NCBI GenBank assembly: GCA_964035545.1
Contig: OZ037768.1
Location: 17,033,875 to 17,097,874, forward strand
Direction: 5' to 3'
Length of the DNA stretch: 64,000 nucleotides
Origin: Bugula neritina
Taxonomy: Eukaryota; Animalia; Bryozoa
Positions 11,658-44,963 of the stretch are shown piece after piece (the stretch's first letter is position 1; each line of letters starts with the position of its first letter). The notes beneath the pieces were generated by a model. The model was not told the origin of the DNA and made no database searches. It saw only the letters and a program-made list of their open reading frames with translations. Made by a program: the position numbers and the translations under genes.

Positions 11658-14600
11658 ATGAAGGGGGACTTAGAGTATGCAGGACATGCTCATTCTAGCA
11701 AAGAATCAGACCGAAGGTCACCTGTGATATCAGGACTTGGAGTTATTGCTATCACAGGTTTACTCATTACAGTAACCACAGCTGGTACTATATTCGGAGT
11801 TCATCTACTCAACAGAATTGATAATCTACAGGTAAGTTTTTCCTTTTGATAATAAAAAAATTGAAGTAATAAAGACTTTTATTCAAGATATTACCTAAAT
11901 AAAACATTTTTACAGCTGACATTAAAAATAACTTTACAACCAATTAAAGCATCACTTAACTGACAACATGCCCAAATATGCTCATAATTAATGCAGGTAT
12001 TGGAATCTCAAGTTTCCCAATTGCAGAGCGAGAATCTTGAACTGAAAGCCAAAGTTGCAGAACATGACTTGAAAATATCCAAAATTGAGGACAATCCCAG
12101 AGCAATCTATGCTACTGACAGCAAACTAACCAGAAGGAAGAGATCAGCCAGTGGTACAATTGACTACGGCTACACTGATGACAGACACAAGTATGCCTAT
12201 GGAACAGGTGGCGGAGGTATGTTTGCTGCCCTAAACATTTTCTAATATGGCACATCATCCAACAGCAATTTCGGTAATCCGACAAAACTTCTTGTGGTAT
12301 TTAAATGAATAGTGTTATTGAGAGTGTGCAAATTTTTACCATATACTCAACTAATTTTATGATTTTAAATTTTATTAGCATGCGCCTGCCCAGCTGGTCC
12401 ACAAGGTCCCCCAGGTCCTCCAGGTCCCAAAGGAGACAGAGGAGATGCTGGTAGACCAGGTTACAATGGTCAACCAGGTCCAGTTGGAGCCACTGGTACA
12501 GCTGGAGTTGGTCTCAAAGGACAAAGAGGTGCCACTGGTTCCACTGGTGTTCGAGGACAAGGATCTGTTGGTGCACCAGGATATGATGGTAAAGATGGTC
12601 TGCCTGGAGTACCTGGTAGAGATGGAGATACCGGCCCAATGGGAGCACCTGGTGTTCCAGGATATGATGGTAAAGATGGAGCTCCAGGACTACCTGGTCA
12701 AGATGGTAACAATGGTTTGCCTGGACGAGATGGTGTTGATGGTCAAGATGGAGAGCCAGGAGCTCGAGGATTACCTGGATATGATGGTAAAGATGGAGCT
12801 CCAGGCCCACAAGGCTTGCCAGGACGACAAGGTGAACGAGGATTTGATGGTCAACCAGGAGCAGCCGGAAAAGATGGTGCTCCAGGACCAGCTGGACCTC
12901 AAGGTGCTCCCGGAAAAGATGGTACCGATGGTCGACATGGTACAGATGGAAACCATGGTAATGATGGGCAAGATGGACAACCAGGCCAACCAGGAGAACC
13001 CGGACCACAAGGTCAACCAGGACCACAAGGAGGCCGAGGTCATCCAGGAAGAGATGGATCTGATGGTCAACCAGGAGAGCCTGGCAGAGATGGAGTTGAT
13101 GGAGCTCCAGGAGCACCAGGATATGATGGACAAGATGGACAACCAGGACCTTCAGGTCAACCAGGACCACAAGGAGCACCCGGTGAGCGTGGACAAGCAG
13201 GAGCACCAGGAAGAGATGGTGTGGATGGCGCACCAGGTCAGCCAGGAGAAAGAGGATCACAAGGTTCAGCCGGAAGAGATGGAGTTGATGGCCAACCAGG
13301 CCCAGCAGGTAGAGATGGTGTTGATGGCAAACCAGGTGCACCTGGATTTGATGGACAAGATGGTCAGCCAGGACCAGCTGGTCAACCAGGCCAGCCTGGC
13401 TCTCGTGGTGATCAAGGCCCTGCTGGTGCTCCAGGTAGAGATGGAGTTGATGGTCAGCCAGGACAAATAGGCCAAACTGGTGCTCCAGGACAACGTGGTG
13501 AACCAGGAGCACAAGGAGCATCAGGAAGAGATGGCAGTGATGGTCAACCAGGACAACGCGGACCAGCAGGCGCACCAGGTTTAGATGGACAAGATGGTCA
13601 ACCAGGAACACCAGGACAAGCAGGACAACAAGGAGCTGTGGGACCACAAGGAGCTCCAGGACCTCAAGGTGCACCTGGTGCACCTGGAGTAGCAGGAGCT
13701 GATGGATTTGATGGACAAGATGGTCAACCAGGACAAACTGGTGCACCTGGGCAAAGAGGAGAAGCTGGACAACCAGGGGCTGCAGGTAGAGATGGTATTG
13801 ATGGAGCACCAGGACAGCCAGGAAGAGATGGAGTTAATGGTCAGCCAGGACAGCAAGGAGCACCTGGACAAAGAGGACAAGATGGAGCACCTGGACAAAT
13901 TGGTGCACCAGGACAGCAAGGAGCACCAGGAGCACAAGGAGCACCAGGTCAACGAGGACAACAAGGAGCATCTGGAAGCCCTGGAAGAGATGGCAGTGAT
14001 GGTCAAAATGGTCAACCAGGACAACAAGGAGCACCAGGTCAACCTGGTCAAGCAGGTGCTCCAGGACAAGTTGGAGCTCCTGGTCAACAGGGAGCACCAG
14101 GACAACAAGGACAGCCAGGATCACAAGGTGCACCAGGCCAAAGAGGTCAAGCTGGAGCACCAGGACAAGCTGGAGCAGCTGGACAGCCAGGAGCTGCTGG
14201 TCAACCAGGTAGAGATGGTGCTGCTGGACAACCAGGACAACAAGGTGCACAAGGTCAACCAGGTACTCCAGGACAAGCTGGTGCACCAGGTCAATCTGGA
14301 GCACCAGGTCAACAAGGTGCTGCAGGCGCTCCAGGAGCACCCGGACAGAGAGGTCAAGCTGGGCAACCAGGCACAGCTGGACAAGCCGGAGCACCAGGAC
14401 AAGTCGGAGCACCAGGACAAGCTGGAGCACCAGGACGAGATGGACAGGCAGGCGCTCGAGGACAAGCAGGAGCAGCTGGTAGAGATGGAAACAATGGAGC
14501 ACCTGGAGCACCAGGTAGAGATGGCAGCGATGGACAGCCAGGTCAGCCAGGAACATCAGGAGCACCTGGAACCCCAGGCCAACAAGGAGCACCTGGTCAA

Positions 14601-17600
14601 CAAGGAGCACCAGGCACACCAGGCCGAGATGGAGCTGCTGGTCAACCCGGTCAACAAGGAGCACCAGGACAAAGAGGTCAAGCTGGAGCACCAGGACAAG
14701 CTGGAGCAGCTGGACAGCCAGGAGCTGCTGGTCAACCAGGTAGAGATGGTGCTGCTGGACAACCAGGACAACAAGGAACACCAGGACAGGCTGGAGCACC
14801 AGGGCAAGCTGGAGCACCAGGACAACAAGGAGCACCTGGCCAACGTGGTCAAGCTGGATCTCCAGGACAGGCAGGAGCAGCTGGTCAACCAGGCGCTGCT
14901 GGACAACCAGGAAGAGATGGTGCCGCTGGTCAACCAGGTCAACAAGGTGCAGCAGGACAACCAGGTCAAGCTGGTGCCCCAGGACAACGAGGCCAAGCAG
15001 GAGCACCCGGTCAACAAGGAGCACCAGGTACACCAGGAAGAGATGGGGTTGCTGGCCAACCTGGCCAACAAGGAGCACCAGGACAAAGAGGACAAGCTGG
15101 AGCACCAGGTCAAGCTGGAGCACCAGGACAAGCTGGAGCACCTGGTCAAGCCGGACAAGCAGGTCAACAAGGGGCACCTGGTCAACAAGGAGCACCAGGC
15201 ACACCAGGCCGAGATGGCGCTGCTGGTCAACCAGGACAACAAGGAGCACCTGGACAAAGAGGTCAAGCCGGATCACCAGGACAAGCTGGAGCAGCTGGAC
15301 AACCAGGAGCAGCTGGTCAACCAGGTAGAGATGGTGCAGCTGGACAACCAGGACAGCAAGGAGCTCCAGGACAGGCTGGAGCACCAGGACAAGCTGGAGC
15401 ACCAGGACAACAAGGAGCACCTGGACAAAGAGGCCAAGCTGGAGCCCCAGGTCAAACTGGAGCAGCTGGACAACCAGGTGCTGCTGGACAACCAGGAAGA
15501 GATGGTGCTGCTGGTCAACCGGGTCAACAAGGTGCAGCAGGACAAGCTGGAGCACCAGGACAAGCTGGAGCTCCTGGTCAAGCTGGAGCACCAGGTCAAC
15601 GAGGACAAGCTGGAGCACCAGGTAGAGATGGTAGCAATGGTCAACCAGGTGCTGCCGGAAGAGATGGAGCACCTGGTCAACAGGGAGCACAAGGTCAACC
15701 TGGTACACCAGGTCAAGCTGGAGCACCAGGTCAACGTGGCGCTGCAGGCACACCAGGACAAGCAGGAGCACCTGGACAGGCTGGAGCACAAGGAGCACCC
15801 GGTCAAAGAGGTCAAGCTGGAGCACCAGGTCAACAAGGAGCAGCTGGACAACCAGGTGCTGCTGGACAACCAGGAAGAGATGGTGCTGCTGGTCAACCAG
15901 GTCAGCAAGGCGCAGCAGGACAGCCAGGTACTCCAGGCCAAGCTGGAGCTCCTGGTCAAGCTGGAGCACCAGGACAACAAGGACAAGCAGGTGCACCAGG
16001 ACAAGCTGGAGCCCCTGGTCAATCTGGAGCACCAGGTCAAAGAGGAGCAGCTGGACAACCAGGTGCTGCTGGTCAACCAGGAAGAGACGGTGCAGCTGGT
16101 CAACCAGGTCAACAAGGAGCACCAGGACAGAGAGGTCAAGCTGGAGCACCAGGACAAGCTGGAGCAGCTGGACAGCAAGGAGCACCCGGAGCACCAGGTA
16201 GAGATGGTGCAGCTGGTCAACCTGGTCAACAAGGAGCAGCTGGTCAACCAGGAACTCCAGGACAAGCAGGAGCACCAGGTCAACGTGGCGCTGCAGGTAC
16301 ACCAGGACAAGCAGGAGCACCAGGACAACAGGGAGCACAAGGTGCACCTGGAAGAGACGGAAACAACGGGCAACCTGGTCAACAAGGAGCTCAAGGACAA
16401 GCTGGAGCACCTGGTCAACAAGGAGCACCAGGCACACCAGGCCGAGATGGAGCTGCTGGTCAACCCGGTCAACAAGGAGCACCAGGACAAAGAGGTCAAG
16501 CTGGAGCACCAGGACAAACTGGAGCAGCTGGACAACCAGGTGCTGCTGGTCAACCAGGTAGAGATGGTGCAGCTGGACAACCAGGACAGCAAGGAGCTGC
16601 AGGTCAAGCTGGAGCACCAGGACAAGCTGGAGCACCAGGACAACAAGGAGCACCAGGCCAAAGAGGTCAAGCAGGAGCACCAGGTGCAGCAGGACAAGCC
16701 GGAGCTCCAGGAAGAGATGGTGCCGCAGGACAACCAGGTTCTGCCGGTCAGCCAGGTAGAGATGGTGCTGCTGGTCAACCAGGACAACAAGGCGCAGCTG
16801 GTCAACCAGGAACACCTGGTCAACAAGGTGCACCTGGTCAACAAGGAGCACCTGGTCAAAGAGGTCAAGCTGGTGCACCAGGACAAGCTGGAGCAGCTGG
16901 ACAACCAGGAGCTGCAGGTCAACCAGGAAGAGATGGATCTGCTGGACAACCAGGACAAGCTGGAGCACCAGGACAAAGAGGACAAGCTGGAGCACCAGGA
17001 CAAGCTGGAGCAGCTGGACAACCAGGAGCTGCAGGTCAACCAGGAAGAGATGGATCTGCTGGACAACCAGGACAACAAGGTGCACCAGGTCAAGCTGGCG
17101 CACCAGGACAACAAGGTCAAGCAGGTGCTCCAGGAAGAGATGGTGCTGCTGGACAGCCAGGAGCCCAAGGACAACCAGGAACACCAGGACAGCAAGGTGC
17201 CCCAGGTCAACGTGGACAAGCAGGTGCCCAAGGACAGTCAGGAGCACCAGGAGTTCCAGGTAGAGATGGTGCTGTTGGACAACCAGGACAACAAGGAGCC
17301 CCAGGAGCTCCAGGAAGAGATGGAGCTAACGGACAGAATGGACAACCTGGAGCCCAAGGCCAACCAGGAACACCTGGACAACAAGGTGCACCAGGATCAC
17401 CTGGCCGAGATGGCAACAATGGCCAACCTGGAACACCAGGTCAACAAGGAGCAGCTGGGCAAGCAGGAGCCCCAGGACAAGCAGGAGCACCAGGTCAACG
17501 TGGTGCTGCAGGCACACCAGGACAAGCAGGTGCACCAGGACAACAGGGAGCACAAGGCGCACCTGGAAGAGACGGAAACAACGGGCAACCTGGTCAACAA

Positions 17601-20600
17601 GGAGCTCAAGGACAAGCTGGAGCACCTGGTCAACAAGGAGCACCAGGCACACCAGGCCGAGATGGAGCTGCTGGTCAACCCGGTCAACAAGGAGCACCAG
17701 GACAAAGAGGTCAAGCTGGAGCACCAGGACAAACTGGAGCAGCTGGACAACCAGGTGCTGCTGGTCAACCAGGTAGAGATGGTGCAGCTGGACAACCAGG
17801 ACAGCAAGGAGCTGCAGGTCAAGCTGGAGCACCAGGACAAGCTGGAGCTCCAGGACAACAAGGAGCACCAGGCCAAAGAGGTCAAGCAGGAGCACCAGGT
17901 GCAGCAGGACAAGCCGGAGCTCCAGGAAGAGATGGTGCCGCAGGACAACCAGGTTCTGCCGGTCAGCCAGGTAGAGATGGTGCTGCTGGTCAACCAGGAC
18001 AACAAGGCGCAGCTGGTCAACCAGGAACACCTGGTCAACAAGGTGCACCTGGTCAACAAGGAGCACCTGGTCAAAGAGGTCAAGCTGGTGCACCAGGACA
18101 AGCTGGAGCAGCTGGACAACCAGGAGCAGCAGGTCAACCAGGTAGAGATGGCGCTGCTGGTCAACCTGGACAACGAGGAGCTGCTGGTCAACCAGGAACA
18201 CCTGGTCAAGCAGGCGCACCAGGTCAAGCAGGTGCACCTGGTCAACAAGGTCAAGCTGGATCACCAGGACAAGCTGGAGCACCTGGACAACAGGGAGCAC
18301 CAGGCACACCAGGACGAGATGGAGCTGCTGGTCAACCTGGTCAACAAGGAGCACCAGGACAGAGAGGTCAAGCTGGTTCACCAGGTCAAGCTGGAGCACC
18401 AGGACAGGCTGGAGCACCTGGTCAAGCAGGAGCACCAGGACAACAAGGCCAAGCTGGAGCACCAGGACAGGCTGGAGCACCAGGACAAGCAGGAGCACCA
18501 GGTCAAAGAGGTCAAGCTGGTACCCCAGGAGCAGCAGGTAACCCAGGAAGAGATGGTGCCGCCGGTCAACCTGGCCAACAAGGTGCCCCAGGACAACAAG
18601 GACAAGCAGGAGCACCAGGACAAGCAGGAGCACCAGGACAAGCAGGAGCTGCTGGCCGAGATGGCTCAAACGGTAGAGATGGTGCAGTTGGCCAACCTGG
18701 CCAACAAGGTGCACCAGGTCAACAAGGACAAGCAGGAGCACCCGGAGCACCTGGCCGAGATGGCAACACAGGAGCACCAGGAACACCTGGTAGAGATGGA
18801 GCAAACGGTCAAGCTGGAGCACCTGGACAACGAGGAGCCGCAGGACAGCCAGGTACCCCAGGACAAGCTGGAGCACCAGGACAAGCTGGCCAACAAGGCG
18901 CTCCAGGTCAAGCTGGAACACCCGGACAACAAGGTGCTGCTGGTCAACCAGGTAGAGATGGTGCTGCTGGACAACCAGGGCAACAAGGCGCAGCAGGTCA
19001 GACTGGAGCTCCAGGACAACCAGGTGCTGCTGGTAGAGATGGTGTTGCTGGTCAACCAGGACAAGCTGGAGCACCTGGACAAAGAGGTCAAGCTGGAGCA
19101 CCAGGACAAGCAGGAGCAGCTGGACAGCCAGGTGCTGCTGGTCAACCAGGTAGAGATGGTGCTGCTGGACAATCAGGTCAAGCCGGACCACAAGGAGCTC
19201 CTGGAACCCCAGGAAGAGATGGTGCAGCTGGTCAGCCAGGACAAGCTGGAGCACCAGGACAAAGAGGTCAAGCTGGAGCACCAGGACAAGCTGGAGCAGC
19301 TGGACAGCCCGGTGCTGCTGGTCAACCAGGTAGAGATGGTGCTGCTGGACAATCAGGTCAAGCCGGACCACAAGGAGCTCCTGGAACCCCAGGAAGAGAT
19401 GGTGCAGCTGGTCAGCCAGGACAAGCTGGAGCACCAGGACAAAGAGGACAAGCTGGAGCACCAGGACAAACAGGAGCAGCTGGACAACCAGGTGCTGCTG
19501 GTCAACCAGGTAGAGATGGCGCTGCTGGACAATCAGGTGCTGCTGGACGTGATGGCAACACAGGTGCTCCAGGTGCACCAGGCAGAGATGGTGCTCCTGG
19601 TCAACCAGGACAGCAAGGAGCTCCAGGACAAGCTGGAGCACCAGGACAAGCTGGAGCTCAAGGACAACAAGGTGCAGCTGGTCAAAGAGGACAAGCTGGT
19701 GCACCAGGACAAGCCGGTAGAGATGGAGCACCTGGTCAACCTGGTGCTGCAGGCAGAGATGGTGTGAATGGAAGAGATGGACAATCTGGACAGCCCGGTC
19801 AAGCTGGAGCACCAGGCCAAGCTGGTGCCCCAGGACAAGCAGGCTCAAGAGGACAAGCAGGTGCACCAGGTCAAGCTGGAGCACCAGGACAGGCTGGAGC
19901 ACCTGGACAACAGGGAGCACCAGGCACACCAGGACGAGATGGAGCTGCTGGTCAACCTGGTCAACAAGGAGCACCAGGACAGAGAGGTCAAGCTGGAGCA
20001 CCAGGACAAGCTGGAGCACCAGGACAAGCTGGAGCACCTGGTCAAGCAGGAGCACCAGGACAACAAGGTCAAGCTGGAGCACCAGGACAGGCTGGAGCAC
20101 CAGGACAAGCAGGAGCTGCAGGCAGAGATGGTGCTAATGGACAAGATGGAAGACAAGGAGCTCCAGGAAGAGATGGTGCTAATGGTCAACCAGGACAACA
20201 AGGTGCCCCAGGACAACAAGGACAAGCAGGAGCACCAGGACAAGCAGGAGCACCAGGACAACCAGGAGCTGCTGGCCGTGATGGCTCAAACGGAAGAGAT
20301 GGTGCCAATGGTCAACCTGGCCAACAAGGAGCCCCAGGACAACAAGGACAAGCAGGAGCACCAGGACAAGCAGGAGCACCAGGTCAAGCTGGAGCTGCAG
20401 GCAGAGATGGTGCTAATGGACAAGACGGAAGACAAGGAGCTCCAGGAAGAGATGGTGCCAATGGTCAACCAGGACAGCAAGGAGCTCAAGGAGCACCAGG
20501 ACAAGCAGGAGCCCCAGGACAAGCAGGAGCACCTGGTCAAGCTGGAGCTCAAGGAGCACCAGGACAAGCAGGATCACCAGGACAGGCTGGTGCACCTGGA

Positions 20601-22769
20601 CAAGCCGGAGCACCAGGACAAGCAGGCGCTCCAGGACAACAAGGCCAAGCTGGAGCACCAGGACAAGCTGGAGCACCAGGACAAGCAGGAGCTGCAGGCA
20701 GAGATGGTGCTAATGGACAAGATGGAAGACAAGGAGCTCCAGGAAGAGATGGTGCTAATGGTCAACCAGGACAACAAGGTGCCCCAGGACAACAAGGACA
20801 AGCAGGTGCACCAGGACAAGCAGGAGCACCAGGACAACCAGGAGCTGCTGGCCGTGATGGCTCAAACGGAAGAGATGGTGCCAATGGTCAACCTGGCCAA
20901 CAAGGTGCCCCAGGACAACAAGGACAAGCTGGAGCACCAGGACAAGCAGGAGCACCAGGTCAACCTGGAGCCGCAGGCAGAGATGGTGCTAATGGACAAG
21001 ATGGAAGACAAGGAGCTCCAGGAAGAGATGGTGCCAATGGTCAACCAGGACAGCAAGGAGCTCAAGGAGCACCAGGACAAGCAGGAGCTCCAGGACAAGC
21101 AGGAGCACCAGGACAACATGGCCAAGCTGGAGCACCAGGACAAGCTGGAGCACCAGGACAAGCAGGTGCAGCTGGACCAGCAGGTTCACCAGGACAACAA
21201 GGAGCACCTGGTGCCCCTGGTAGAGATGGAGTCAATGGCCAAAATGGTCAACAGGGCGCACAGGGAGTTGCTGGACAACCTGGTGCACCAGGTCAAGCAG
21301 GTGCAGCAGGACAACCTGGTACTCCAGGACAAGCAGGAGCACCTGGTCAAGCAGGACCAGCTGGAGCACCAGGACAAGCAGGAGCACCTGGCCAAGCAGG
21401 ACCAGCTGGAGCACCAGGACAACACGGAGTTGCTGGTGCCCCAGGAAACGCTGGAAGAGATGGCGTTAATGGACAAAATGGTCAAGCTGGTGCACAAGGT
21501 CAACCTGGACCAGCTGGACCAGCTGGAGCTCCTGGTAGAGATGGAGTCAATGGTGCCCCTGGACATCCAGGAAGTAATGGCGCACCAGGTGTTCCAGGAA
21601 GAGATGGTGTAAATGGACAAGCAGGAGTTAACGGACAACCAGGAGCACAAGGACCAGCTGGAGCACCAGGAAGCAATGGTGTTAATGGCCAGCAAGGAGC
21701 TCCAGGACCTGCTGGAAGAGATGGCAATCCTGGTGCACCAGGACGAGATGGCGCTAACGGACAAGCTGGACCTGCTGGACCCGCAGGTGCTAATGGACAA
21801 AATGGTGCCGCAGGCCGTGATGGAAATCCAGGTCCAGCAGGACCTGCAGGACAGCCTGGAGCACCAGGAGTTAATGGACAGAATGGACAAGATGGTCTTC
21901 CAGGAGTACCTGGTAGAGATGGAGTCAATGGTCAATCAGGTCAAAGAGGAGCCCAAGGACAACGAGGAGATACTGGAGCACCAGGACCTCAAGGTGCTGC
22001 AGGTGCACCAGGCCAGCATGGTGCCCCAGGTAGAGATGGAAATACTGGAGCACCAGGAAATGATGGAGCTCAAGGAGCACCAGGAGTACCAGGATATGAT
22101 GGTCAAGATGGACAACCAGGACAGCAAGGAGCACCTGGACCACAAGGTCCTCAAGGTAACTCTGGTCCAGCAGGACCTGCAGGACGAGATGGTCAAAATG
22201 GAGCACCAGGAGTACCAGGATATGATGGTCAAGATGGTAGACCCGGCCCACAAGGAGCACCTGGACCACAAGGAGCACGAGGAAACACAGGGCAAGCAGG
22301 GGCACGTGGTAGCGATGGCAAAGATGGCGCACCTGGTGTACCAGGATATGATGGCCAGCCAGGAGCCAACGGTGAACGTGGACCCGCAGGACCTGCAGGA
22401 CGAGATGGTAATCCAGGAGCACCAGGACACGATGGTGCACCAGGCGATGCTGGAGCACCCGGAGTAGATGGTGCACCTGGAGTGCCCGGAAGAGATGGCT
22501 ATGATGGACTACCAGGAAAAGATGGTGAACGAGGACCAGCAGGACCAGCAGGAGCAGCTGGCCATGATGGCAGACCAGGACCCCAAGGAGCACCAGGTGT
22601 TGATGGAGTAGATGGCAAAGATGGTTTACCAGGATTTGATGGACTACCAGGAGCACCTGGTCTAGATGGTGTGGATGGTGCACCAGGCCAAACTGGCGCC
22701 ACCGGACCAATCAGAATTATCGGCAAACCAGATCCAAATGCAGTAGGCGGTTATGCCAAAAGAAGATAA
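11658..22769 (+). CDS. Giant type II membrane-anchored, furin-released collagen A (cuticle-collagen-like, about 3594 aa, Ala/Gln-rich helix)
   Basis: Coding exons 11658-11831 ([38 protein letters not shown]..), 11997-12216 (coiled coil [31 protein letters not shown], furin site RRKR, DYGY..KYAYG) and 12379-22769 (ACACPA, Gly-X-Y, tail [21 protein letters not shown]). Intron phases 0 and 1 join in frame; total 10785 nt. The ORF-track start at 12639 is an internal Met. Confidence 0.92.
16260..18165 (+). repeat. Internal near-identical duplication within collagen A (about 16260-16950 repeated at about 17475-18165; offset 1215 nt)
   Basis: Marker gaagagacggaaacaacggg at 16351 and 17566; the flanking ~0.7 kb matches with few substitutions. 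Confidence 0.85.
19050..19535 (+). repeat. 180-nt (60-aa) tandem repeat within collagen A
   Basis: Blocks starting at 19141 and 19321 are nearly identical (gtcaaccaggtagagatggtgctgctggacaatcaggtcaagccggaccacaagg...). Confidence 0.85.
20050..21110 (+). repeat. Higher-order tandem repeat within collagen A (279+297 = 576 nt period)
   Basis: The [12 protein letters not shown]-coding marker ggcagagatggtgctaatggacaaga recurs at about 20121, 20400, 20697 and 20976. Confidence 0.8.
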
Positions 22770-23039: not shown

Positions 23040-23045
23040 AATAAA
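23040..23045 (+). terminator. Putative polyadenylation signal of collagen A
   Basis: First AATAAA downstream of the stop at 22769. Confidence 0.55.
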
Positions 23046-25879
23046 TGTAAGAGATGATTATATGCACACTTTTCTATTATTAGAATTTCTCAGAATACAA
23101 ATGGCTAAGACCTACTGTACACATAGCTCAGGAGTGCAAATTAAATCACTTGACAAATAATTTGCAGAAAACAAATTCAAAAGGAACATTTTTAGACACA
23201 CACCTTTAAACCAACAACACTCAACTCCCTAAATTTACAGTATATTTTTAATAACATGCATAGTCTAAACACAGTATTAAAAAACAAACAAGTATGGCTG
23301 CAGTTTATAATTTAATTAGCTAAAATTGCATAATTTAAAAGTAGCAGTCTTCATTATTACCAAAAATATCATAAACTTTGAGGTATTATAATATTAAATA
23401 TAGAATTTTCACCTAGAAAAGTAGGCCGTAATGGCAGCACTCCAGGCTAAACTTTGCCTAAACTGATTACAATTATGAAAAGTATTCAGGCCCAAGTATT
23501 ACACTGCAGTTAGTGCATAGTTCTGAATGATCTAGAATTCCAATATGTGATATCTAATGGGCACAACTATTTAAATTTTCTGCTCAACTATTCCTATAGC
23601 AGTTCAAAAATAGATGCTCAGCTAAAATGTAAATGTACATACAAATTAGTAGCAAATTTAGTAACTAAAGTAATTTGGTTTATCACTACCATATCAAGCC
23701 CTGCAATACTGTAAGTCAAAGTTTCCAGCAAATTGTGTATAAATTATGTCATTTGCTCTTCCATAGTGCACCACACAAAAATATGAAGATCCATAGTCTG
23801 GCAGAAAAACACCAATTTTTGACTTAGGTTCGCAACCCCGGATAAAGTTTTTTTCTCTTCTGATTATTCAAATATAGGGTCTAGGTAAATGTTTCCAGGT
23901 GGGTGTGGACTTCTTACCCTTGAGCATTTTGAGAAATTCAAGATGGCCGCCAGGCACTAGACGATTCTTTATAATTCAAATGTATCTACCCACCGAGGCT
24001 AAATTTAAGGTTCCAATGCTTTGAAATCTTTAGAAATTAATATAATAAAGATGCATGTGTCCTTATCATGTGTATTATTGAGTAATAGGCAAATGATCCC
24101 CAAGGGTAACTAAGCTAAGCCTTTATCATTCATTTTTTTAAGTTTAACCTAGCCTTGCCGTGTTTATAATTTCCTTGCATCTCTGCATCAGTTTGTTCTA
24201 AATTCTATGGGGTGATGTTATATGCTGATTACAAATATGTCCAACAAATAAAGCTGAAAGGGGTTCTGCAAAATTGAAATGCAACGCCATTGTCATTTGA
24301 GCTAAATAGCAATTTATTTCAAACTAGCATGCCTATCAAAAAGGTTTGTTGAGCTGCCAATTTAATAGTTATTTTCAGTTTTAAGACTTTAGCCATGTTT
24401 TTTAAAGTTAGAAAAAGGGGTCAACAACCTTAATAACACAACACCATGACTTCTTAACATAATTTAATTGCTTTATTATTGACACATCGTTTATCTAAAT
24501 ATTGACATTTTTGCTTTCGAAAACTACTTCTACTATCAGCACATTTGACTTTTTCTCTAAAAACATTTGTAAACAGTTTTTTTTATGAATAAGAATCTAT
24601 TTTATGCTGGGGGAAGTAATACATCCATTAAAACAGTGGTTCCCTACCTTTTTCATACCAATCTCCTTTCATAAAATTTTACTATTAATTTCTCCACTTT
24701 AATGACTTATGTCCAGTGCAATGGAACACTAATGGTTGAAACGGATTTGGTGAAAGTAGTTAATTCTACTTTTGGTGGTTTTCCCAAAATGCTAAATAGA
24801 AAAAGTCTCCCCAGAATGTACTGGGCCTGAGAATATTGGTGGGAGAGCTGTTGAAGCCAGTCTTTGATGAAAATGTAATCACTAGCATGGAGGACCTTGA
24901 AAAGATGTTGACTAAGATTTCAGAGAGCTCAAGAACAGCAAAACTGTGGGTCATGTGCTTTATTAGACCAATTTTTACCATCAACACCCACATCAAAGCT
25001 GATAGAGAAGGAGACTGGGCCTTACACCTAGCAATGGAAGAGGAAATGCATTTATATCTGTATAGCATGTAGGTCATGCCACAAGATGTAAGGATTGAAT
25101 TCGTGACTGGTAACCACACAATGCATCATAAACTCGGCCAGCTCAACAGCATCTGGTCAAACATGACCATTGAGGTGACCTTTGTGAGATGTGGTCACAG
25201 CAAGGGGGAATCATTGGCATCACCAATAAAACTGAAATTGTCAAGGTGTGGGTGTATAGTACTTCTGCATGCAACAAGATACAGTAAGGCCTCAGTGACA
25301 TCAGAGATGAGTCTGAAATAAATGCTTCCACTACTCATAAGGAAGAGATGCAATCAAGAATCCAATCTGATTCAAGGGACAGAAAGTTTGTCAAAGGGAA
25401 GATTGAACTCTGCAATGTCCTACTCGAAGAAGGATGCCACCCAGTTGCTCTTGTCAATATTGAAACAGAGAAAGTCATCAGTTATTCAGCAATTATTATT
25501 AACAATATTTTTGTCATAGGTAAAGCATATATACAAGAATTTAAAGTGAACTAGTCGGAGGGGTTAACTAAATCCTTGTCATCTAAAGTGAAGACAATGG
25601 TATCATCTCAAAGGCATATTAAGGTTTCTAATACCACTGTATGTGATACTGAAGTCATATATGCCCGAACCATTGTACTCAAGCAGACCAAGAATTTGAA
25701 TGTGGGCTCTTTAATAGCTCATAAACTTGCAGCATTGTCACCTTCTACATTCAAGGAAACAGGGAAAATAAGAAAAACTAAGACCAAGTTAATTTTAAAA
25801 AAATCTGTGAAAATTAAGTTTTCAGAACAGTCTGCGACAAGAAGATAAGAAAATTCCCACCAAGTTGGAGGTTCTGTTA

Positions 25880-29153: not shown

Positions 29154-29186
<33 letters not shown>

Positions 29187-29187
29187 G
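29154..29187. repeat. (TA)n microsatellite
   Basis: tatatatatatatatatatatgtatatatatatg. Confidence 0.85.
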
Positions 29188-34631: not shown

Positions 34632-34729
34632 CCAATCAGCTAAAACCACCAATCAGCAGCCAACAAATCGAATTCGAGGTTTGGTCAAGAGAGTATAAAA
34701 CAGCTGTGTAATCAAGATACTTCAGATTC
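34632..34729 (+). promoter_or_regulatory. Putative core promoter of collagen B (two CCAAT boxes, TATA, Inr-like)
   Basis: CCAATCAGC at 34632 and 34649; TATAAAA at 34694; TCAGATTC with its A at 34724, 30 nt after the TATA start. Confidence 0.65.
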
Positions 34730-34797
34730 TCTCCTCTGAATTTCAAAGAAGAGAGTTCCAGAATATCATCTTCTCCATCTGTAACACTACACAGAGG
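34724..34797 (+). other. Putative non-coding first exon of collagen B
   Basis: Runs from the Inr-like site to the donor GG|GTAAGC at 34798; acceptor TTTGTAG ends at 35340. Confidence 0.55.
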
Positions 34798-35347
34798 GTA
34801 AGCATGGACTTTTTTCACTATCTGGGAGAGTTAATATAAACCTGGTTGTAGATAATATAATATTAGCTATCTTTAGGTTTATTAATCAAGAAAAGTCAAA
34901 TAAAATTTAGTCAATTTATTTTCATGAGTTGAAACAAATATTTGAAATTTAACTTGATGGTTAAAAAAGAATAATTTTTTAAAGGGTAATATGAAAATAT
35001 TATTAGTAAAATCATACACTTGCTTATTTATTCTACACTCAAAAACTTGTTTTTGACTTTATAGGAAACGTTTTGCTGAATTTTTTAAGCACTAGACTAC
35101 ATGGCTGAGTGTAGGAATTACCAAAATTAGCCAAAATTTTCAAATAGAACATTACTTTAGGAAAGACTAAAAATTTCTATAACCTTTTATTCCTTAAAAT
35201 TTCTAAGCTATTAAAAAACTATATGGCAGATTATTTAATGAATTTTATTATATACAAACAGTATTCTAAAATTCCACGTGAAATAAAATTATTAACTGCC
35301 ATTAGACAATTGTAATACTGATTGTATACTTGATTTGTAGAGTAAAG

Positions 35348-38300
35348 ATGAAGGGGGACTTAGAGTATGCAGGACATGCTCATTCTAGCAAAGAATCAGA
35401 CCGAAGGTCACCTGTGATATCAGGACTTGGAGTTATTGCTATCACAGGTTTACTCATTACAGTAACCACAGCTGGTACTATATTCGGAGTTCATCTACTC
35501 AACAGAATTGATGACCTGCAGGTATTTATTTCATATAGAATTATTTGCAATAGTTAATACATACATTTCAACTTGACATTCCTAAAACAAAAAAGAGAAA
35601 ATTCTGTAAATAATATGCTTATTGATAATTTCAATTTCTGTACATCTTTTAAACATTAATTTTAAATTAAATCTTGCGGGTAAGCAAACACAAAAATAAA
35701 GAGCGGACCTATAATGTTTTAGACAAGGAATATGGAATTAGAACTGAAGGTAGCATACAAAACGGATATTGAGCAGCAAAATGAGCGAATTAATAATTTG
35801 GAAAAGAAAACAACCGAACACCTGAGGAAAAGGAGAGCAAATTACGGCGATGAATATGGATATGCGGCTGGAAATGGCCCTGAATATGGAGGTAAGTAGT
35901 TGACTAGCAGAAACTAATAATCCTGAGTATATGTGCAATTTTCTATTTGATTAGCTATCTAAACTAACTTTTATATAAAACCAGAACTTTGGCTTAAGTC
36001 ACAGAATGTACTTATCATGGTGTTATTCAATTATTTTAGCTACAGGTTGCAGCTGCCCAGCTGGACCACCAGGTAGAGATGGCCCCAGAGGACCACCTGG
36101 ACCCAAGGGTGACCGTGGAGATGCAGGACGCCCAGGAAGCAATGGGGTACCAGGCAGAATTGGTGCTACTGGTGCATATGGTGCAAGAGGAGCTACTGGA
36201 GCAACTGGTGTTCGAGGTGTTGGTGTACCTGGAGAAGATGGTAGAGATGGAGTGCCTGGAAGAGTTGGATCAACCGGAGCTCCTGGAGTACCAGGTAGAG
36301 ATGGATATGATGGCACACCAGGACCAGTTGGCCAGCCAGGAGAACCAGGAAGAGATGGTGTTGATGGCAACCATGGCCGTGATGGAAACCACGGTAATGA
36401 TGGTGAAGATGGACGTCCAGGAGAACCAGGCAGACCAGGAGAGCCAGGAGAGCGAGGAGAACAAGGAAGCCCAGGCAGTCCTGGCAGAGATGGTTCCCCA
36501 GGATCACCTGGTTACGATGGTCAAGATGGAACTCCAGGTAGAGATGGATCACCAGGAGAAAGAGGACAAGATGGTCAACCTGGTCAAACAGGCGCACCTG
36601 GATCACCTGGATATGATGGACAAGATGGACAACCTGGTGAACCAGGAAGAGACGGTGAACCTGGAAGAGATGGGCAACCAGGTGAACGAGGACAAGATGG
36701 ACAGACAGGTGCTCCCGGTCAACGAGGAGAACCAGGAGTTTCAGGTTCACCAGGTCGAGATGGAGCACCAGGTGAGCGTGGACAAGATGGTGCACCTGGA
36801 TCACCAGGTGTACCAGGCTACGACGGACAAGATGGACAGCCAGGCGAACCAGGCAGAGATGGAGCACCAGGTGAACGTGGACAAGATGGAGCAGCAGGTG
36901 TGCCAGGCAGAGATGGATTCGATGGACAAGATGGACAACCAGGTGCACCAGGCAGAGATGGATCACCTGGAGAGAGAGGTCAAGATGGATCACCAGGTAG
37001 AGATGGAAATCCTGGTGAAAGAGGACAAGATGGAGCTCCAGGAGCACCAGGAGTACCAGGATTTGATGGGCAAGATGGACAGCCAGGAAGCTCTGGTAGA
37101 GATGGAGCACCAGGACAAAGAGGGGAGCCAGGAATTGATGGACAACCTGGCTCACAAGGAGCACCAGGAAGAGATGGATCTCAAGGAGCAAGAGGAGAAC
37201 CAGGACAGAGAGGTGAGCCAGGACAACGTGGAGAACCAGGAGCTTCAGGTAGAGATGGTTCACCAGGAGCACCAGGTAGAGATGGAACACCTGGAGATCG
37301 AGGTCAAGATGGCGCTCCAGGATCACCAGGAAGAGATGGTTTCGATGGACAAGATGGGGCTCAAGGAGCACCAGGCCAAAGAGGAGAGAGTGGACAGCCC
37401 GGCAATGATGGGAGACCCGGATCACCTGGAGAACGTGGACAAGATGGCGCTCCTGGTTCACCAGGAAGAGATGGATTTGATGGACAAGATGGGGCCCCAG
37501 GTGCTCCAGGAAGAGATGGATCTCAAGGACAAAGAGGAGAACCAGGACAGAGAGGTGAGCCAGGACAACGTGGAGAAGCTGGTACACCAGGAAGAGATGG
37601 GTCACCAGGATCCCCAGGTCAAGATGGTCAACCAGGTGCTCGAGGAAATGATGGCCAAGATGGCCAACCAGGATCACCAGGAAGAGATGGAGCTCCAGGA
37701 TTACGAGGAGAAGCTGGCCAACGAGGTGAGCCAGGGCAGCGTGGAGAATCAGGTAACCCAGGAAGAGATGGCTCACCAGGATCTCCAGGTCAAGATGGTC
37801 AACCAGGTGCACGAGGAAATGATGGGGCTCCAGGATCACCAGGAAGAGATGGGTCACAAGGAGCAAGAGGAGAACCCGGACAAAGAGGAGAACCAGGACA
37901 ACGTGGAGAGTCAGGTAACCCAGGAAGAGATGGCTCAACAGGATCTCCAGGCAGAGATGGAGCACCAGGTGAACGTGGGCAAGATGGTGCACCAGGTTCT
38001 CCCGGCCAAGATGGACAACCAGGTGCTCGTGGATTTGATGGACAAGATGGCCAAACAGGATCACCAGGTAGAGATGGAGCGCCAGGCTCAAGAGGTGAGC
38101 AAGGCCAACGTGGTGAACCTGGTACACCAGGAAGAGATGGGTCACCAGGATCTCCAGGTCAAGATGGTCAACCAGGTGCTCGAGGAAATGATGGCCAAGA
38201 TGGCCAACCAGGATCACCAGGAAGAGATGGAGCTCCAGGATTACGAGGAGAAGCAGGCCAACGAGGTGAACCAGGGCAGCGTGGAGAATCAGGTAATCCC

Positions 38301-41300
38301 GGAAGAGATGGCTCACCTGGATCTCCAGGTCAAGATGGTCAACCAGGTGCACGAGGAAATGATGGGGCTCCAGGTTCACCAGGAAGAGCTGGTTTTGATG
38401 GACAAGATGGGGCTCCAGGAGCACCAGGTAGAGATGGAGCACCAGGACAAAGAGGCGAACCAGGCCAACGTGGAGAGGCTGGCCAGCAAGGTCAATCTGG
38501 GCAACCAGGCCAAAGGGGAGAACGTGGAGAGCCTGGAACTGCCGGAAGAGATGGGTCACCAGGAGCACCAGGACAAACTGGAGCACCTGGAGACAGAGGA
38601 CAAGATGGAAACCCCGGAAGAGACGGTGCTCCAGGACAACGAGGACTGGATGGTAGTCCAGGTGCACCAGGTGCATCAGGATTTGATGGACAAGATGGTG
38701 CACCTGGAGCTCCAGGCAGAGATGGGTCACCTGGTGCAAGAGGAGAGCCTGGTCAAAGAGGTGAGCCAGGCCAAAGAGGTGAGCAAGGACAACGTGGAGA
38801 ACCAGGAACTCAAGGTAGAGATGGTGCATCTGGATCACCAGGTAGAGATGGTGCACCAGGAGAACGTGGACAAGACGGTGCTTCAGGAAGAGATGGCTCA
38901 CCAGGCGCCCCAGGACAAGATGGTCAACCAGGTGCACGAGGATTTGATGGTCAAGATGGACAACCTGGAGCACCAGGAAGAGATGGAGCTCCAGGATCAC
39001 CAGGACAAGATGGTCAGGCTGGTAACCCAGGTAGAGACGGATCACCAGGCGAGCGTGGACAAGATGGCGCTCCTGGATCACCAGGAAGAGCTGGTTTTGA
39101 TGGACAAGATGGGGCTCCAGGATCACCTGGAAGAGATGGATCTCCAGGCCAAAGAGGAGAAGCAGGACAAAGAGGTGAACCAGGACAACGTGGAGAAGCA
39201 GGAACACCAGGAAGAGATGGTTCACCTGGATCTCCAGGTAGAGATGGTGCAGCTGGTGAGAGAGGACAAGATGGTTCTCCAGGAGCACCAGGTTCATCAG
39301 GATTCGATGGTCAAGATGGTGCACCAGGAGCTCCAGGCAGAGATGGGTCACCTGGTGCTAGAGGAGAGCCAGGTCAAAGAGGAGAACCAGGTCAAAGAGG
39401 AGAACCTGGACAGCGTGGTGAGGCTGGCAATGCAGGTAGAGATGGTGCTCCAGGCAGAGATGGAGCAGCTGGAGAACGTGGACAAGATGGAAATCCTGGA
39501 AGAGATGGTGCTCCAGGACAACGAGGACTGGATGGTAGTCCAGGTGCACCAGGTGCATCAGGATTTGATGGACAAGATGGTGCACCAGGAGCTCCAGGCA
39601 GAGATGGGTCGCCTGGTGCTCGAGGAGAACCAGGTCAACGAGGTGAGCCAGGTCAAAGAGGCGAGCCAGGACAACGCGGAGAACCAGGAACTCAAGGTAG
39701 AGATGGTTCACCAGGAGCAGCAGGTAGAGATGGCGAACGAGGTGAGCGTGGACAAGACGGTGCTTCAGGATCACCAGGAAGAGATGGTGCACCAGGATCA
39801 CCAGGTCAAGATGGTCAACCAGGTGCTCGTGGATTTGATGGTCAAGATGGAGCTCCAGGATCACCAGGAAGAGATGGATCTCCTGGATCACCAGGACAAG
39901 ATGGTCAACCAGGCGCACGAGGAAATGATGGCCAAGATGGCCAACCAGGATCACCAGGAAGAGATGGAGCTCCAGGATCTCCAGGACAAGATGGTCAACC
40001 AGGAGCCCGTGGATTTGACGGACAAGACGGTGCACCTGGAGCACAAGGTAGAGATGGATCACCTGGTGCAAGAGGTGAACCAGGCCAGCGTGGAGAACCC
40101 GGACAACGCGGAGAATCAGGAACACCAGGTAGAGATGGTGCACCTGGATCACCAGGAAGAGATGGAGCCCAAGGAGAACGTGGACAAGATGGTCAACAGG
40201 GTAACCCTGGAAGAGACGGAGCAACAGGCGACCGTGGACAAGATGGCGCTCCTGGATCACCAGGAAGAGCTGGTTTTGATGGACAAGATGGGGCTCCAGG
40301 ATCACCAGGAAGAGATGGAGCACCAGGACAAAGAGGAGAACCAGGCCAACGTGGAGAGCCTGGCCAACAAGGTCAATCTGGGCAACCAGGCCAGAGGGGA
40401 GAACGTGGAGAGCCAGGAGCTTCTGGAAGAGATGGATCACCAGGAGCACCAGGACAAACTGGAGCACCTGGAGATCGAGGACAGGATGGAGCACCTGGTA
40501 GAGATGGTGAACGTGGAGAACGAGGTCAAGATGGTGCTCCTGGATCACCAGGAAGAGCTGGTTTTGATGGACAAGATGGGGCACCAGGATCACCAGGAAG
40601 AGATGGAGCTCCAGGATCTCCAGGACAAGATGGTCAACCAGGTGCACGAGGATTTGATGGCCAAGATGGAGCACCAGGATCACCAGGAAGAGATGGAGCT
40701 TCAGGATCTCCAGGACAAGATGGTCAACCTGGTAACCCAGGTAGAGATGGAGCACCAGGTGAGCGTGGACAAGATGGCGCTCCTGGATCACCAGGAAGAG
40801 CTGGTTTTGATGGACAAGATGGGGCTCCAGGATCTCCAGGTAGAGATGGATCACCTGGTGTAAGAGGTGAACCAGGCCAAAGGGGAGAACCTGGCCAACA
40901 AGGCCAATCTGGGCAACCAGGTCAAAGAGGAGAACGCGGAGAAGCAGGAGCTCCAGGTAGAGATGGTTCACAAGGATCACCAGGCCAAACTGGATCACCC
41001 GGAGAACGTGGACAAGATGGCGCTCCTGGTTCACCAGGAAGAGATGGTTTTGATGGACAAGATGGAGCTCCAGGCTCCCCAGGAAGAGATGGATCTCCAG
41101 GAGCAAGAGGAGAACCAGGTCAACGTGGTGAGGCAGGACAATCCGGTAGAGATGGCTCACCAGGTCAGAGAGGTGAACCAGGACAAAGAGGTGAGCCTGG
41201 TCAAAGAGGTGAGCCAGGTCAGCGTGGTGAGGCTGGTGCACCAGGAAACCCAGGCCGTGACGGTTCACAAGGAGCACCTGGTAATGACGGATCACCAGGT

Positions 41301-44300
41301 GAACGTGGGCAAAGCGGATCTCCAGGTAGAGATGGATCTCCAGGATCACCAGGACAAGATGGTCAACCAGGAGCTTCTGGAAACCCAGGAAGAGATGGTG
41401 AAAATGGAAGAGATGGAGCACCTGGAAACCCAGGAAGAGATGGCTTTGATGGACAAGATGGAGCTCCAGGAGCACCAGGAAGAGATGGTTCCCAAGGAGC
41501 AAGAGGAGAACCAGGTCAACGCGGAGAGTCTGGAGCACCAGGCAGAGATGGTTCACAAGGATCACCAGGCCAAACTGGATCACCTGGAGAACGTGGACAA
41601 GATGGCGCTCCTGGTTCACCAGGAAGAGATGGTTTTGATGGACAAGATGGAGCTCCAGGCTCCCCAGGAAGAGATGGATCTCCAGGAGCAAGAGGAGAAC
41701 CAGGACAGAGAGGTGAGCCAGGACAACGTGGAGAACCAGGTAACTCCGGAAGAGACGGTGCACCTGGATCACCAGGTAGAGATGGAGCACCTGGTGATAG
41801 AGGACAAGATGGAGCACCAGGTTCACCTGGAAGAGATGGATCATCAGGATCTCCAGGCAGAGATGGCTCACCCGGAGCACCAGGACAAGACGGCCAACCA
41901 GGCGCAAGAGGAAATGATGGACAAGATGGACAGCCCGGTTCACCAGGAAGAGATGGTGCACCAGGATCTCCAGGTCAAGATGGTCAACCAGGTGCTCGTG
42001 GATTCGATGGTCAAGATGGAGCTCCAGGATCTCCAGGAAGAGATGGAGCACCAGGAGCAAGAGGAGAGGCTGGTCAGCGAGGAGAAGCAGGACAACGTGG
42101 AGAACCAGGTAACTCCGGAAGAGATGGTGCACCAGGATCACCAGGTAGAGATGGTACACCAGGTGATAGAGGACAAGACGGAGCACCAGGATCTCCCGGA
42201 AGAGATGGTTCACCAGGATCTCCAGGTCAAGATGGTCAACCAGGTGCTCGTGGATTCGATGGTCAAGATGGAGCTCCAGGATCTCCAGGAAGAGATGGAG
42301 CACCAGGAGCAAGAGGAGAGGCTGGTCAGCGAGGAGAAGCAGGACAGCGTGGAGAACCAGGTAACCCTGGAAGAGATGGTGCACCAGGATCACCAGGTAG
42401 AGCTGGAGAACGAGGTGAGCGAGGACAAGATGGAGCACCAGGCTCTCGTGGTCAAGATGGACAACCAGGTGCAAGAGGAAATGATGGACAAGATGGACAG
42501 CCCGGTTCACCAGGAAGAGATGGTGCACCAGGATCTCCAGGTCAAGATGGTCAACCGGGCGCTCGTGGCTTTGATGGTCAAGATGGAGCTCCAGGATCTC
42601 CAGGAAGAGATGGAGCACCAGGAGCAAGAGGAGAGGCTGGTCAGCGAGGAGAAGCAGGACAGCGTGGAGAACCAGGTAACTCCGGAAGAGATGGTGCACC
42701 AGGATCACCAGGTAGAGATGGTACACCAGGTGATAGAGGACAAGACGGAGCACCAGGATCTCCCGGAAGAGATGGTTCACCAGGATCTCCAGGTCAAGAT
42801 GGTCAACCAGGCGCTCGTGGCTTTGATGGTCAAGATGGAGCTCCAGGATCTCCAGGAAGAGATGGAGCACCAGGAGCAAGAGGAGAGGCTGGCCAGCGAG
42901 GAGAAGCAGGACAGCGTGGAGAACCAGGTAACTCTGGAAGAGATGGTTCACCAGGATCACCTGGTAGAGATGGAGCACCAGGTTCTCCTGGACAAGATGG
43001 ACAACCAGGTTCTCCTGGACAAGATGGACAACCAGGTGCCCGTGGATTTGATGGTCAGGATGGGGCTCCTGGATCACCAGGAAGAGATGGAGCACCAGGA
43101 GCAAGAGGAGAGGCTGGTCAGCGAGGAGAAGCAGGACAGCGTGGAGAACCAGGTAACCCCGGAAGAGATGGTGCACCAGGATCACCAGGTAGAGCTGGAG
43201 AACGAGGTGAGCGTGGACAAGATGGATCCCCAGGATCTTCAGGTAGAGATGGTTCTCCAGGAATCAGAGGCGAGCCAGGACAACGCGGAGAACCAGGTAC
43301 CCCAGGAAGAGATGGAGCCAATGGTGAACGTGGTCAAGATGGCGCACCAGGATCTCCAGGAGCTAGAGGATTTGATGGACAAGATGGTGCACCTGGATCA
43401 CCAGGTAGAGATGGTGCTCGAGGAAATGATGGACAAGATGGCGCTTCAGGATCACCAGGAAGAGATGGTGCACCAGGATCACCAGGTCAAGATGGTCAAC
43501 CAGGTGCACGAGGCTTTGATGGTCAAGATGGAGCTCCAGGATCACCAGGAAGAGATGGATCTCCCGGATCACCAGGACAAGATGGTCAACCAGGAGCACG
43601 AGGAAATGATGGCCAAGATGGCCAAACAGGATCACCAGGAAGAGATGGTGCACCAGGATCTCCAGGACAAGATGGACAACCAGGAGCACGAGGCTTTGAT
43701 GGACAAGATGGTGCACCAGGATCACCAGGTAGAGATGGATCACCTGGTGCAAGAGGTGAGCCAGGACAACGTGGTGAGCCAGGACAAAGAGGTGAGACTG
43801 GACAACAAGGTCAATCAGGATCACCAGGTAGAGATGGGGCTCGAGGAAATGATGGACAAGATGGCGCCCCAGGATCACCTGGAAGAGATGGTGCACCAGG
43901 ATCTCCAGGACAAGATGGACAACCAGGTGCACGAGGCTTTGATGGTCAAGATGGAGCACCAGGATCACCAGGAAGAGATGGATCTCCAGGATCACCAGGA
44001 CAAAGAGGTGAGACTGGACAACAAGGTCAATCAGGATCACCAGGTAGAGATGGGGCTCGAGGAAATGATGGACAAGATGGCACCCCAGGATCACCAGGAA
44101 GAGATGGTGCACCAGGATCTCCAGGACAAGATGGACAACCAGGTGCACGAGGCTTTGATGGACAAGATGGTGCACCAGGATCACCAGGTAGAGATGGAGC
44201 AAACGGAGAACGTGGTCAGGATGGAGCACCAGGTTCACCAGGCAGGGATGGAGCACCAGGACCAAGTGGATTTGATGGACAAGATGGTGCACCAGGAGCA

Positions 44301-44963
44301 CCAGGAAGAGATGGAGCACCAGGATCATCTGGTAGAGATGGCTCACCAGGAGAACGAGGTCAAGATGGTAACCCCGGATCACCTGGACGAGATGGAGCAC
44401 CAGGAGCACCAGGGGAACGAGGAGCTGATGGTTCACCTGGTAGAGATGGAACACCAGGATATGATGGACAAGACGGTCTTCCAGGAGCTCCTGGACAAGA
44501 TGGAGCACCTGGTTCACCTGGTAGAGACGGAGAACCAGGACAACGAGGATATGATGGAGCACCTGGAGCACCTGGAGCACCTGGAGAAAGAGGACAAGAT
44601 GGTCAATCAGGTAGAGATGGAGCAGCTGGCAACCCAGGACAAGATGGACAACCAGGCAGAGATGGTGCACCTGGACCATCAGGTTACGATGGCCAAGATG
44701 GTCAACCTGGTGAACCAGGTAGAGATGGAGCACCTGGGCCACGCGGTGAAACTGGAGCTCCAGGAAGGGACGGAGCACCTGGTCAACGTGGCGAAACAGG
44801 TCAACAGGGTACACGTGGACAAGATGGCATACCAGGAAGAGATGGAGCACCCGGCAAAGATGGCTATGATGGGCTACCAGGTCAGACTGGTGCTACAGGA
44901 CCTATTCGTATAGTGCAAGGGAATGGTAGTGGAGTTGCTGCACGTGGTGGCTACGGTCACTAG
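35348..44963 (+). CDS. Giant type II membrane-anchored, furin-released collagen B (about 3088 aa, Asp/Glu/Arg/Ser-rich helix)
   Basis: Coding exons 35348-35521 (same TM exon as A), 35723-35891 ([56 protein letters not shown]) and 36040-44963 (alternative in-frame acceptor giving 36046; ATGCSCPA, Gly-X-Y, tail [21 protein letters not shown]). Intron phases match gene A; total 9267 nt. The ORF-track start at 36006 is intronic. Confidence 0.92.
37581..38390 (+). repeat. 540-nt-offset internal duplication within collagen B
   Basis: Blocks starting at 37581 and 38121 (ggtacaccaggaagagatgggtcaccaggatc..) match over about 260 nt. Confidence 0.8.
41900..43220 (+). repeat. Higher-order tandem repeat within collagen B (units of 252, 315, 252, 225 nt)
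   Basis: Marker ccaggagcaagaggagaggctgg at 42051, 42303, 42618, 42870 and 43095. Confidence 0.8.

What the first reader, a model, noticed from the sequence alone, without database searches (positions are those of the whole stretch)
11658..44963. Tandem pair of micron-long, membrane-tethered, furin-released collagens with no C-propeptide: candidate genes for giant cuticle collagens
Seen: both spliced proteins read cytoplasmic tail - TM helix - coiled coil - RXKR/RXRR - Tyr/Gly telopeptide - CxC - Gly-X-Y - 18-aa tail. After one or two early Gly-X-Gly imperfections the register appears unbroken for about 1128 (A) and 965 (B) triplets. Established: fibrillar collagen I has about 338 triplets (300 nm) and a COLFI C-propeptide. 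An N-terminal TM, coiled coil, furin site and Cys cluster is the layout of nematode cuticle collagens (about 300 aa) and broadly of the membrane collagens XIII/XXIII/XXV, all far shorter. Inference: at about 0.29 nm per residue these give rods of roughly 0.97 and 0.83 micrometres that fold N-to-C from a membrane anchor. That is the size class recalled for annelid cuticle collagens (roughly 1-2.4 micrometres), which are known mainly from biochemistry. This could be a poorly described giant-collagen family.
Basis: partly seen in the sequence, partly recalled or inferred. Interest (0 to 1): 0.92.

Follow-up and report, generated by a model that had tools for sequence, protein, structure and literature searches.

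The report
Giant membrane-anchored bryozoan collagens
Two neighbouring genes of the moss animal Bugula neritina encode collagen chains with about 1,000 unbroken Gly-X-Y repeats, three times our tendon collagen, that appear to fold from a membrane anchor and be cut free as rods almost a micrometre long; related genes occur in other bryozoan-rich samples, but I found no description of the family.

Summary
Gene A (3,594 aa; 13+5+1,127 triplets) and gene B (3,088 aa; 18+964) read cytoplasmic tail, TM helix, coiled coil, RxKR/RxRR, Tyr/Gly telopeptide, CxC, helix, 18-aa tail; no COLFI. Both coding introns of A are spliced in contigs of three RNA(-like) runs from three studies; B's splicing is inferred. 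The genome is the bryozoan Bugula neritina (exact size match to the HiFi assembly), not an annelid. An independent contig repeats the ends of both genes with glycine codons spared, so this is not an assembly artefact. Metagenome contigs show a conserved family (same intron phases, furin site, CxCP, a His motif in the helix; one helix of at least 347 unbroken triplets). No annotated full-length relative was found. It works like a MACIT or nematode cuticle collagen but fails both membership tests. Giant collagens (to 8,859 aa) are already predicted in annelids, with very different proline placement; kinship with them and a cuticle role are untested. The scan noted a different ~990-triplet collagen elsewhere in this genome. 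Verdict: a real, undescribed collagen family; new variant of a known kind.

The parts
11658..11831 (+). Gene A first coding exon: 22-aa cytoplasmic tail (conserved MKGDxEYAGH start), TM signal anchor (residues about 23-49), start of coiled coil; phase-0 donor
11997..12216 (+). Gene A second coding exon: coiled coil, furin-type site RRKR (12132-12143), Tyr/Gly telopeptide; phase-1 donor
12379..22769 (+). Gene A last exon (10.4 kb, one exon): CxC at 12381-12389, Gly-X-Y 13+5+1,127 triplets (unbroken run 12570-22712), 18-aa tail 22713-22766, stop
34694..34798 (+). Likely TATA box and non-coding first exon of gene B (donor after 34798)
   Evidence: sequence; a contig of run X11 joins a near-identical exon end to the shared TM exon (loose end); inference
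35348..35521 (+). Gene B first coding exon (tail + TM); 35333-35512 is identical over 180 bp to 11643-11822 of gene A
35723..35891 (+). Gene B second coding exon: coiled coil, RKRR (35825-35836), Tyr/Gly telopeptide
36040..44963 (+). Gene B last exon (8.9 kb): CxC at 36048-36056, Gly-X-Y 18+964 triplets (unbroken run 36231-44906), 18-aa tail, stop

Best explanation
These are two expressed paralogues of a bryozoan family of type II membrane collagens whose purpose is to make very long, headless, structural collagen rods. Shown: the gene models, splicing of A, the unbroken register, conservation of the N-terminal module. Inferred from MACIT and nematode collagens: the signal anchor inserts three chains in the ER membrane with the N-terminus in the cytosol; the juxtamembrane coiled coil and CxC set the register, so the helix zips N-to-C and needs no C-propeptide; prolyl 4-hydroxylase acts on the Y-position Pro (38% of triplets in A, 42% in B; almost none in X); a furin-type convertase cuts at RxKR/RxRR and frees homotrimers of about 308 and 281 kDa chains, about 0.98 and 0.84 um long. 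With only 14 and 2 Lys, lysyl-oxidase cross-linking is unlikely; Tyr sits in the telopeptide and in GYD triplets near both helix ends, so oxidative Tyr cross-links plus the CxC disulfides are the likely bonds. The rods form a non-banded fibrous layer laid down by epithelium. The most likely site is the organic cuticle/cystid wall (about 45%), next the basal matrix of tentacles, sheath and ligaments (about 35%); the site is not shown.
For: Models and register; spliced contigs in three studies; HiFi assembly at 132x, longest exact repeat in the helices 290 bp; independent contig L072 repeats the last 288 triplets of A and the start of B, with only 3 of 138 differences in Gly codon positions 1-2 against about 31 expected (p about 1e-11); homologues at 45-88% identity keep the tail motif, phase-0 and phase-1 introns, RxKR, Tyr/Gly peptide, CxCP and a G-x-H-G motif 80-190 residues into the helix; L047 runs 347 unbroken triplets to its contig end, already past the 344 ceiling reported for fibrillar collagens (PMC2443231); heptad pattern and weak match to a trimeric coiled-coil model (E 0.004, below cut-off); N-terminal folding and furin release of MACITs, RxxR and Tyr cross-links of nematode collagens (PMC4678570, PMC10538796).
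Against: No protein, localisation or cleavage data. No read spans the whole mRNA; only the first 1.2 kb of A's last exon was laid. B's coiled coil scores weakly (40% hydrophobic a/d). Bryozoan cuticle is usually described as chitin-protein, not collagen (own knowledge). Full length of homologous helices is unknown because all contigs end inside them.
Confidence: 0.68

Rival explanations
1. They are true homologues of the annelid giant cuticle collagens: one lophotrochozoan family of membrane-nucleated cuticle collagens.
For: Both are far longer than fibrillar collagens; annelid cuticle collagens are made by epidermis and have very long helices (PMC11766948); giant predicted proteins exist in alvinellids and Eisenia; an N-terminal nucleation module would solve their folding too.
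Against: No annelid protein was hit by the TM exon among 1.84 billion representatives (a 58-aa query is weak) or by three helix searches (the 7,700-8,900-aa proteins lie outside the length windows). Pro placement is opposite (X-Pro 33-40% there, 0.5-3.5% here). Annelid molecules are described with globular domains, absent from the mature chains here.
Confidence: 0.2
2. They stay largely membrane-bound and act as micron-long cell-to-skeleton or cell-to-matrix tethers, with shedding only as regulation (as for collagen XIII or XVII).
For: The cytoplasmic tail and TM are the most conserved part (invariant MKGDxExAGH) and are homogenised between A and B, which suggests a cytosolic or membrane partner; bryozoans anchor tissue to the skeleton through tendon cells (PMC9303787).
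Against: A four-residue multibasic site is kept in every homologue read far enough; there is no C-terminal binding domain; the conserved tail could equally be an export or sorting signal.
Confidence: 0.15
3. The length is partly an assembly or recent repeat-expansion artefact without function.
For: Internal near-duplications exist (1,215-bp period with 3 differences in 540 bp; 576-bp period), mean HiFi read length about 9.7 kb is similar to the exon.
Against: Exact repeats are at most 290 bp; two paralogues of different composition are both giant; all periods are multiples of 9; an independent contig agrees; a homologue has at least 347 unbroken triplets.
Confidence: 0.04

Closest known systems
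MACITs (collagens XIII, XXIII, XXV; C. elegans COL-99)
   Same: Type II TM, juxtamembrane coiled coil, furin site, collagenous ectodomain, folding from the N-terminus (PMC4678570, PMC10538796).
   Different: MACITs are about 640-820 aa with interruptions and a conserved two-Cys C-terminal motif, and were not found in Lophotrochozoa; here the helix is unbroken for 964-1,127 triplets, lies in one exon, and the tail has no Cys.
Nematode cuticle collagens (PF01484 Col_cuticle_N)
   Same: About two thirds are type II TM; 109 of 173 have an RxxR site; tyrosine-based cross-links (PMC10538796).
   Different: Short interrupted helices flanked by Cys clusters on both sides; no PF01484 match here; helix about twenty times longer; no C-terminal Cys.
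Annelid giant cuticle collagens (Alvinella, Paralvinella, Eisenia, Riftia)
   Same: Very long helix, up to 2.4 um by rotary shadowing (Gaill 1991 as cited in PMC2443231); predicted proteins of 7,700-8,859 aa (PMC12403961).
   Different: Two to three times longer; X-position Pro 33-40%; described with globular domains; domain layout not reported in the papers I could read; different phylum.
Fibrillar collagens (COLFI)
   Same: One long uninterrupted helix, Pro in Y, short telopeptides after processing.
   Different: Ceiling near 344 triplets, C-propeptide, many short exons, Lys cross-links. Bugula has its own COLFI loci elsewhere.

Membership tests
MACIT | Type II transmembrane topology | tested here: met
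   No signal peptide; hydrophobic peak at residues 23-41 (mean 2.05); prediction only
MACIT | Juxtamembrane coiled coil and furin site | tested here: met
   Heptads in A, RxKR/RxRR in all homologues read
MACIT | Interrupted triple-helical regions | tested here: not met
   Only one or two 2-residue imperfections near the start, then 964-1,127 unbroken triplets
MACIT | Conserved C-terminal motif with two cysteines | tested here: not met
   The only Cys are the N-terminal CxC; criterion from PMC4678570
Nematode cuticle collagen | Col_cuticle_N domain PF01484 | tested here: not met
   No match on either N-terminal exon (exon by exon) or anywhere in the genome
Nematode cuticle collagen | Short interrupted Gly-X-Y blocks flanked by conserved Cys | tested here: not met
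   definition in PMC11766948
Nematode cuticle collagen | N-terminal TM and RxxR site | tested here: met
Fibrillar collagen | COLFI C-propeptide | tested here: not met
   Stop 18 residues after the helix, confirmed for A in contig L072; no COLFI match on this chromosome
Annelid cuticle collagen | Very long triple helix | tested here: met
   About 0.98 and 0.84 um predicted, shorter than the 2.4 um annelid molecules
Annelid cuticle collagen | Terminal globular domain | tested here: not met
   Mature ends are 21-25 and 18 residues; feature from PMC11766948
Annelid cuticle collagen | Sequence homology of the non-helical ends to the annelid giant proteins | not testable with these tools
   No annelid giant protein was returned by any search; length windows exclude 7,700-8,900 aa
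Annelid cuticle collagen | Location in the epidermal cuticle | not testable with these tools
   No tissue or proteomic data

The most novel reading that the evidence does not exclude
The pair shows the general design of lophotrochozoan giant cuticle collagens: annelid micron-long collagens share this TM - coiled coil - furin - CxC head, all fold from a membrane anchor, and the bryozoan cuticle is partly collagenous and homologous to the annelid one.
Probability: 0.2. Interest if true: 0.85.

Novelty: new variant of a known kind. Interest (0 to 1): 0.62.

Why it matters
It gives concrete, expressed genes for headless collagen rods three times the fibrillar ceiling, encoded in a single 9-10 kb exon. 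That makes it testable how a cell folds and exports a 1-um triple helix without a C-propeptide, and whether membrane nucleation lifts the length limit of about 340 triplets. It supplies a sequence signature to check against the annelid giant collagens, whose biosynthesis is open, and the first molecular handle on bryozoan structural matrix. It also shows the TM/furin collagen design in Lophotrochozoa, where MACITs were reported absent.

Tried and rejected
Three homologue searches with helix regions returned only generic Gly-X-Y matches (collagen VII, XXI, fibrillar; longest unbroken run among fetched hits 342): uninformative for orthology and not evidence of kinship. ESM Atlas search of the TM exon gave nothing above 0.87. 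Pfam gave only Collagen and weak coiled-coil matches. The short-exon collagen gene upstream of the window (C4:17.003-17.011 Mb) has no MACIT C-terminal motif in the stretch scanned. A's non-coding first exon was not found. No periodicity like a D-period emerged (best self-identity lags 0.35 against a median 0.27). The rRNA search failed; species was fixed by assembly size instead. Gaill 1995 and Snellman 2000 are not held. A/B heterotrimer judged unlikely: lengths differ by 163 triplets and the imperfections are out of register.

Full report
Observation. Six-frame scanning found two stop-free frames of 3,466 and 2,994 codons on the + strand, each holding one huge Gly-X-Y run. Joining the two short upstream exons at GT..AG sites gives A = 11658-11831, 11997-12216, 12379-22769 (3,594 aa) and B = 35348-35521, 35723-35891, 36040-44963 (3,088 aa). 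Runs are 13+5+1,127 triplets in A and 18+964 in B. Each protein has a 22-residue N-terminal tail, one hydrophobic segment, a coiled-coil-like stretch, RRKR or RKRR, a 21-25-residue Tyr/Gly peptide, CxC (the only cysteines), the helix and an 18-residue tail. Shuffling A's helix gives at most 11 triplets in a row.

Expression. Contigs of runs X1, X3 and X11 (three studies; X3 is oligo-dT RNA on record, the other two are guessed RNA) skip exactly the 165- and 162-bp introns of A, and single contigs run from the TM exon through the furin exon 1.2 kb into the collagen exon; intron bins are empty in these runs, whereas X20 behaves as DNA. Depth figures were very high in X11 and X1 but the tool does not allow ranking by them.

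Organism and assembly. The genome has 216,009,554 bases, longest scaffold 35,640,107, and this chromosome 24,795,343, which are the figures of Bugula neritina tzBugNeri2.1, a 132x HiFi assembly (PMC11480708). The helices grew by in-register duplications (periods 1,215, 576, 567, 180 bp, all multiples of 9), but the longest exact repeat is 290 bp. A separate public contig (L072) holds the last 288 triplets of A, its stop, the intergenic stretch and the start of B; differences avoid the first two positions of Gly codons (3 of 138, p about 1e-11). It has a 20-base gap in B near its end, which may be a short-read error. Artefact is therefore unlikely, though no single read across a whole exon was seen.

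Family. The 58-aa TM exon finds nine unnamed open frames among 1.84 billion representatives (two near-identical, the others 45-88%), all exon translations from metagenome contigs; a pattern scan adds 17 loci. Where the contigs reach far enough they show the same three exons, a phase-0 intron after the TM exon, a phase-1 intron before CxCP, RxKR, a Tyr/Gly peptide, and mostly a G-x-H-G motif (DGNHG, DGRHG) 80-190 residues into the helix. Many come from samples labelled BRYA16, which I take to be the bryozoan-dominated plastic-debris metagenomes of PMC5069773 (label match is my inference); these hold at least three paralogue types. The taxa of the others are unknown. L047 has 13+5 triplets like A and then 347 unbroken triplets to its contig end. 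In Bugula only A and B carry this TM exon, but shorter collagens with the same general layout lie at C2:33.08 Mb and C5:7.03 Mb. No annotated full-length relative appeared in three searches.

Composition. Pro is 14% of each helix and almost all in Y (A 428 Y, 40 X; B 405 Y, 5 X). A's core is neutral, Gln/Ala-rich with charged ends; B is evenly charged, Asp/Arg/Ser-rich. Lys is 14 and 2 in the mature chains; Tyr is confined to the telopeptide, the first 300 and the last 230 residues. The TM exon is identical over 180 bp between A and B, synonymous sites included, while flanking introns and the next exon have diverged: gene conversion or exon replacement, pointing to selection for the same membrane/tail module.

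Mechanism (inferred). By analogy with MACITs, whose coiled coil aids trimerisation, whose helix starts from the N-terminus and whose ectodomain is shed by furin (PMC4678570, PMC10538796), three membrane-anchored chains register through the coiled coil and CxC, zip N-to-C, are hydroxylated at Y-Pro and are released as headless rods of about 0.98 and 0.84 um (0.286 nm per residue). Cross-linking through Tyr and the CxC disulfides is more likely than through Lys. Homotrimers are more likely than A/B mixtures. The tissue is unknown: cuticle or cystid wall about 45%, basal matrix about 35%, retained tether about 15%.

Comparison. The proteins work like MACITs and nematode cuticle collagens but are members of neither: no interruptions, no C-terminal Cys motif, no PF01484. 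They are not fibrillar: no COLFI, and Bugula has ordinary COLFI loci on other chromosomes. Fibrillar helices stop near 344 triplets (PMC2443231). Giant collagens are not unique: alvinellid and earthworm proteins of 7,700-8,859 aa are predicted (PMC12403961), with X-Pro 33-40%; that paper does not give their domain layout, and I could not fetch them, so homology is open. In ten paper searches I found no description of bryozoan collagen genes; most subscription papers are not covered.

Verdict. Real, expressed (A), conserved and apparently undescribed: a new variant of the type II membrane, furin-released collagen design with a record-class unbroken helix in one exon.

Noticed in passing
window 11643-11822 and 35333-35512: 180 bp identical between the two paralogues (TM exon and its acceptor) while introns and all other exons have diverged; looks like gene conversion.
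   Followed up: partly
G000 C1:30,181,944-30,192,062 (+) and 30,232,210-30,243,392 (-) (L007, L008, L010, L011): Two further multi-exon collagens of about 991 and 985 triplets (summed runs) followed by EGF-like sequence; different design, but nearly the same length as gene B (982). Four collagens near 1,000 triplets in one genome is unexplained.
   Followed up: partly
G000 C8:0.13-4.3 Mb: Dozens of matches to the C-terminal part of the COLFI model spread over 4 Mb, besides four ordinary COLFI loci: a large unexplained array.
   Followed up: no
G000 C2:33,081-33,085 kb and C5:7,023-7,030 kb: Shorter type II collagens with TM, coiled coil, RxKR, CxC and short tails (about 250+ and 430+ triplets; C5 is Lys-rich); distant relatives or parallel designs.
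   Followed up: partly
window 23794-29665: About 5.9 kb absent from the independent contig L072; holds broken reverse-transcriptase-like and transposase-like scraps (24800-28340): a polymorphic mobile-element insertion between the genes.
   Followed up: partly
window 47491-48204: Minisatellite of about 33-35 bp units.
   Followed up: no
   Followed up: no
G000 C4:17.003-17.011 Mb (-), L016-L017: A short-exon collagen gene about 25 kb before the window start; no MACIT C-terminal motif seen.
   Followed up: partly
G000 C6:11,174,072-11,175,412 and C17:12,213-13,505: A full-length COI copy on a chromosome (likely nuclear mitochondrial insert) and a COI-family gene without TGA on a small contig (possibly bacterial).
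   Followed up: no
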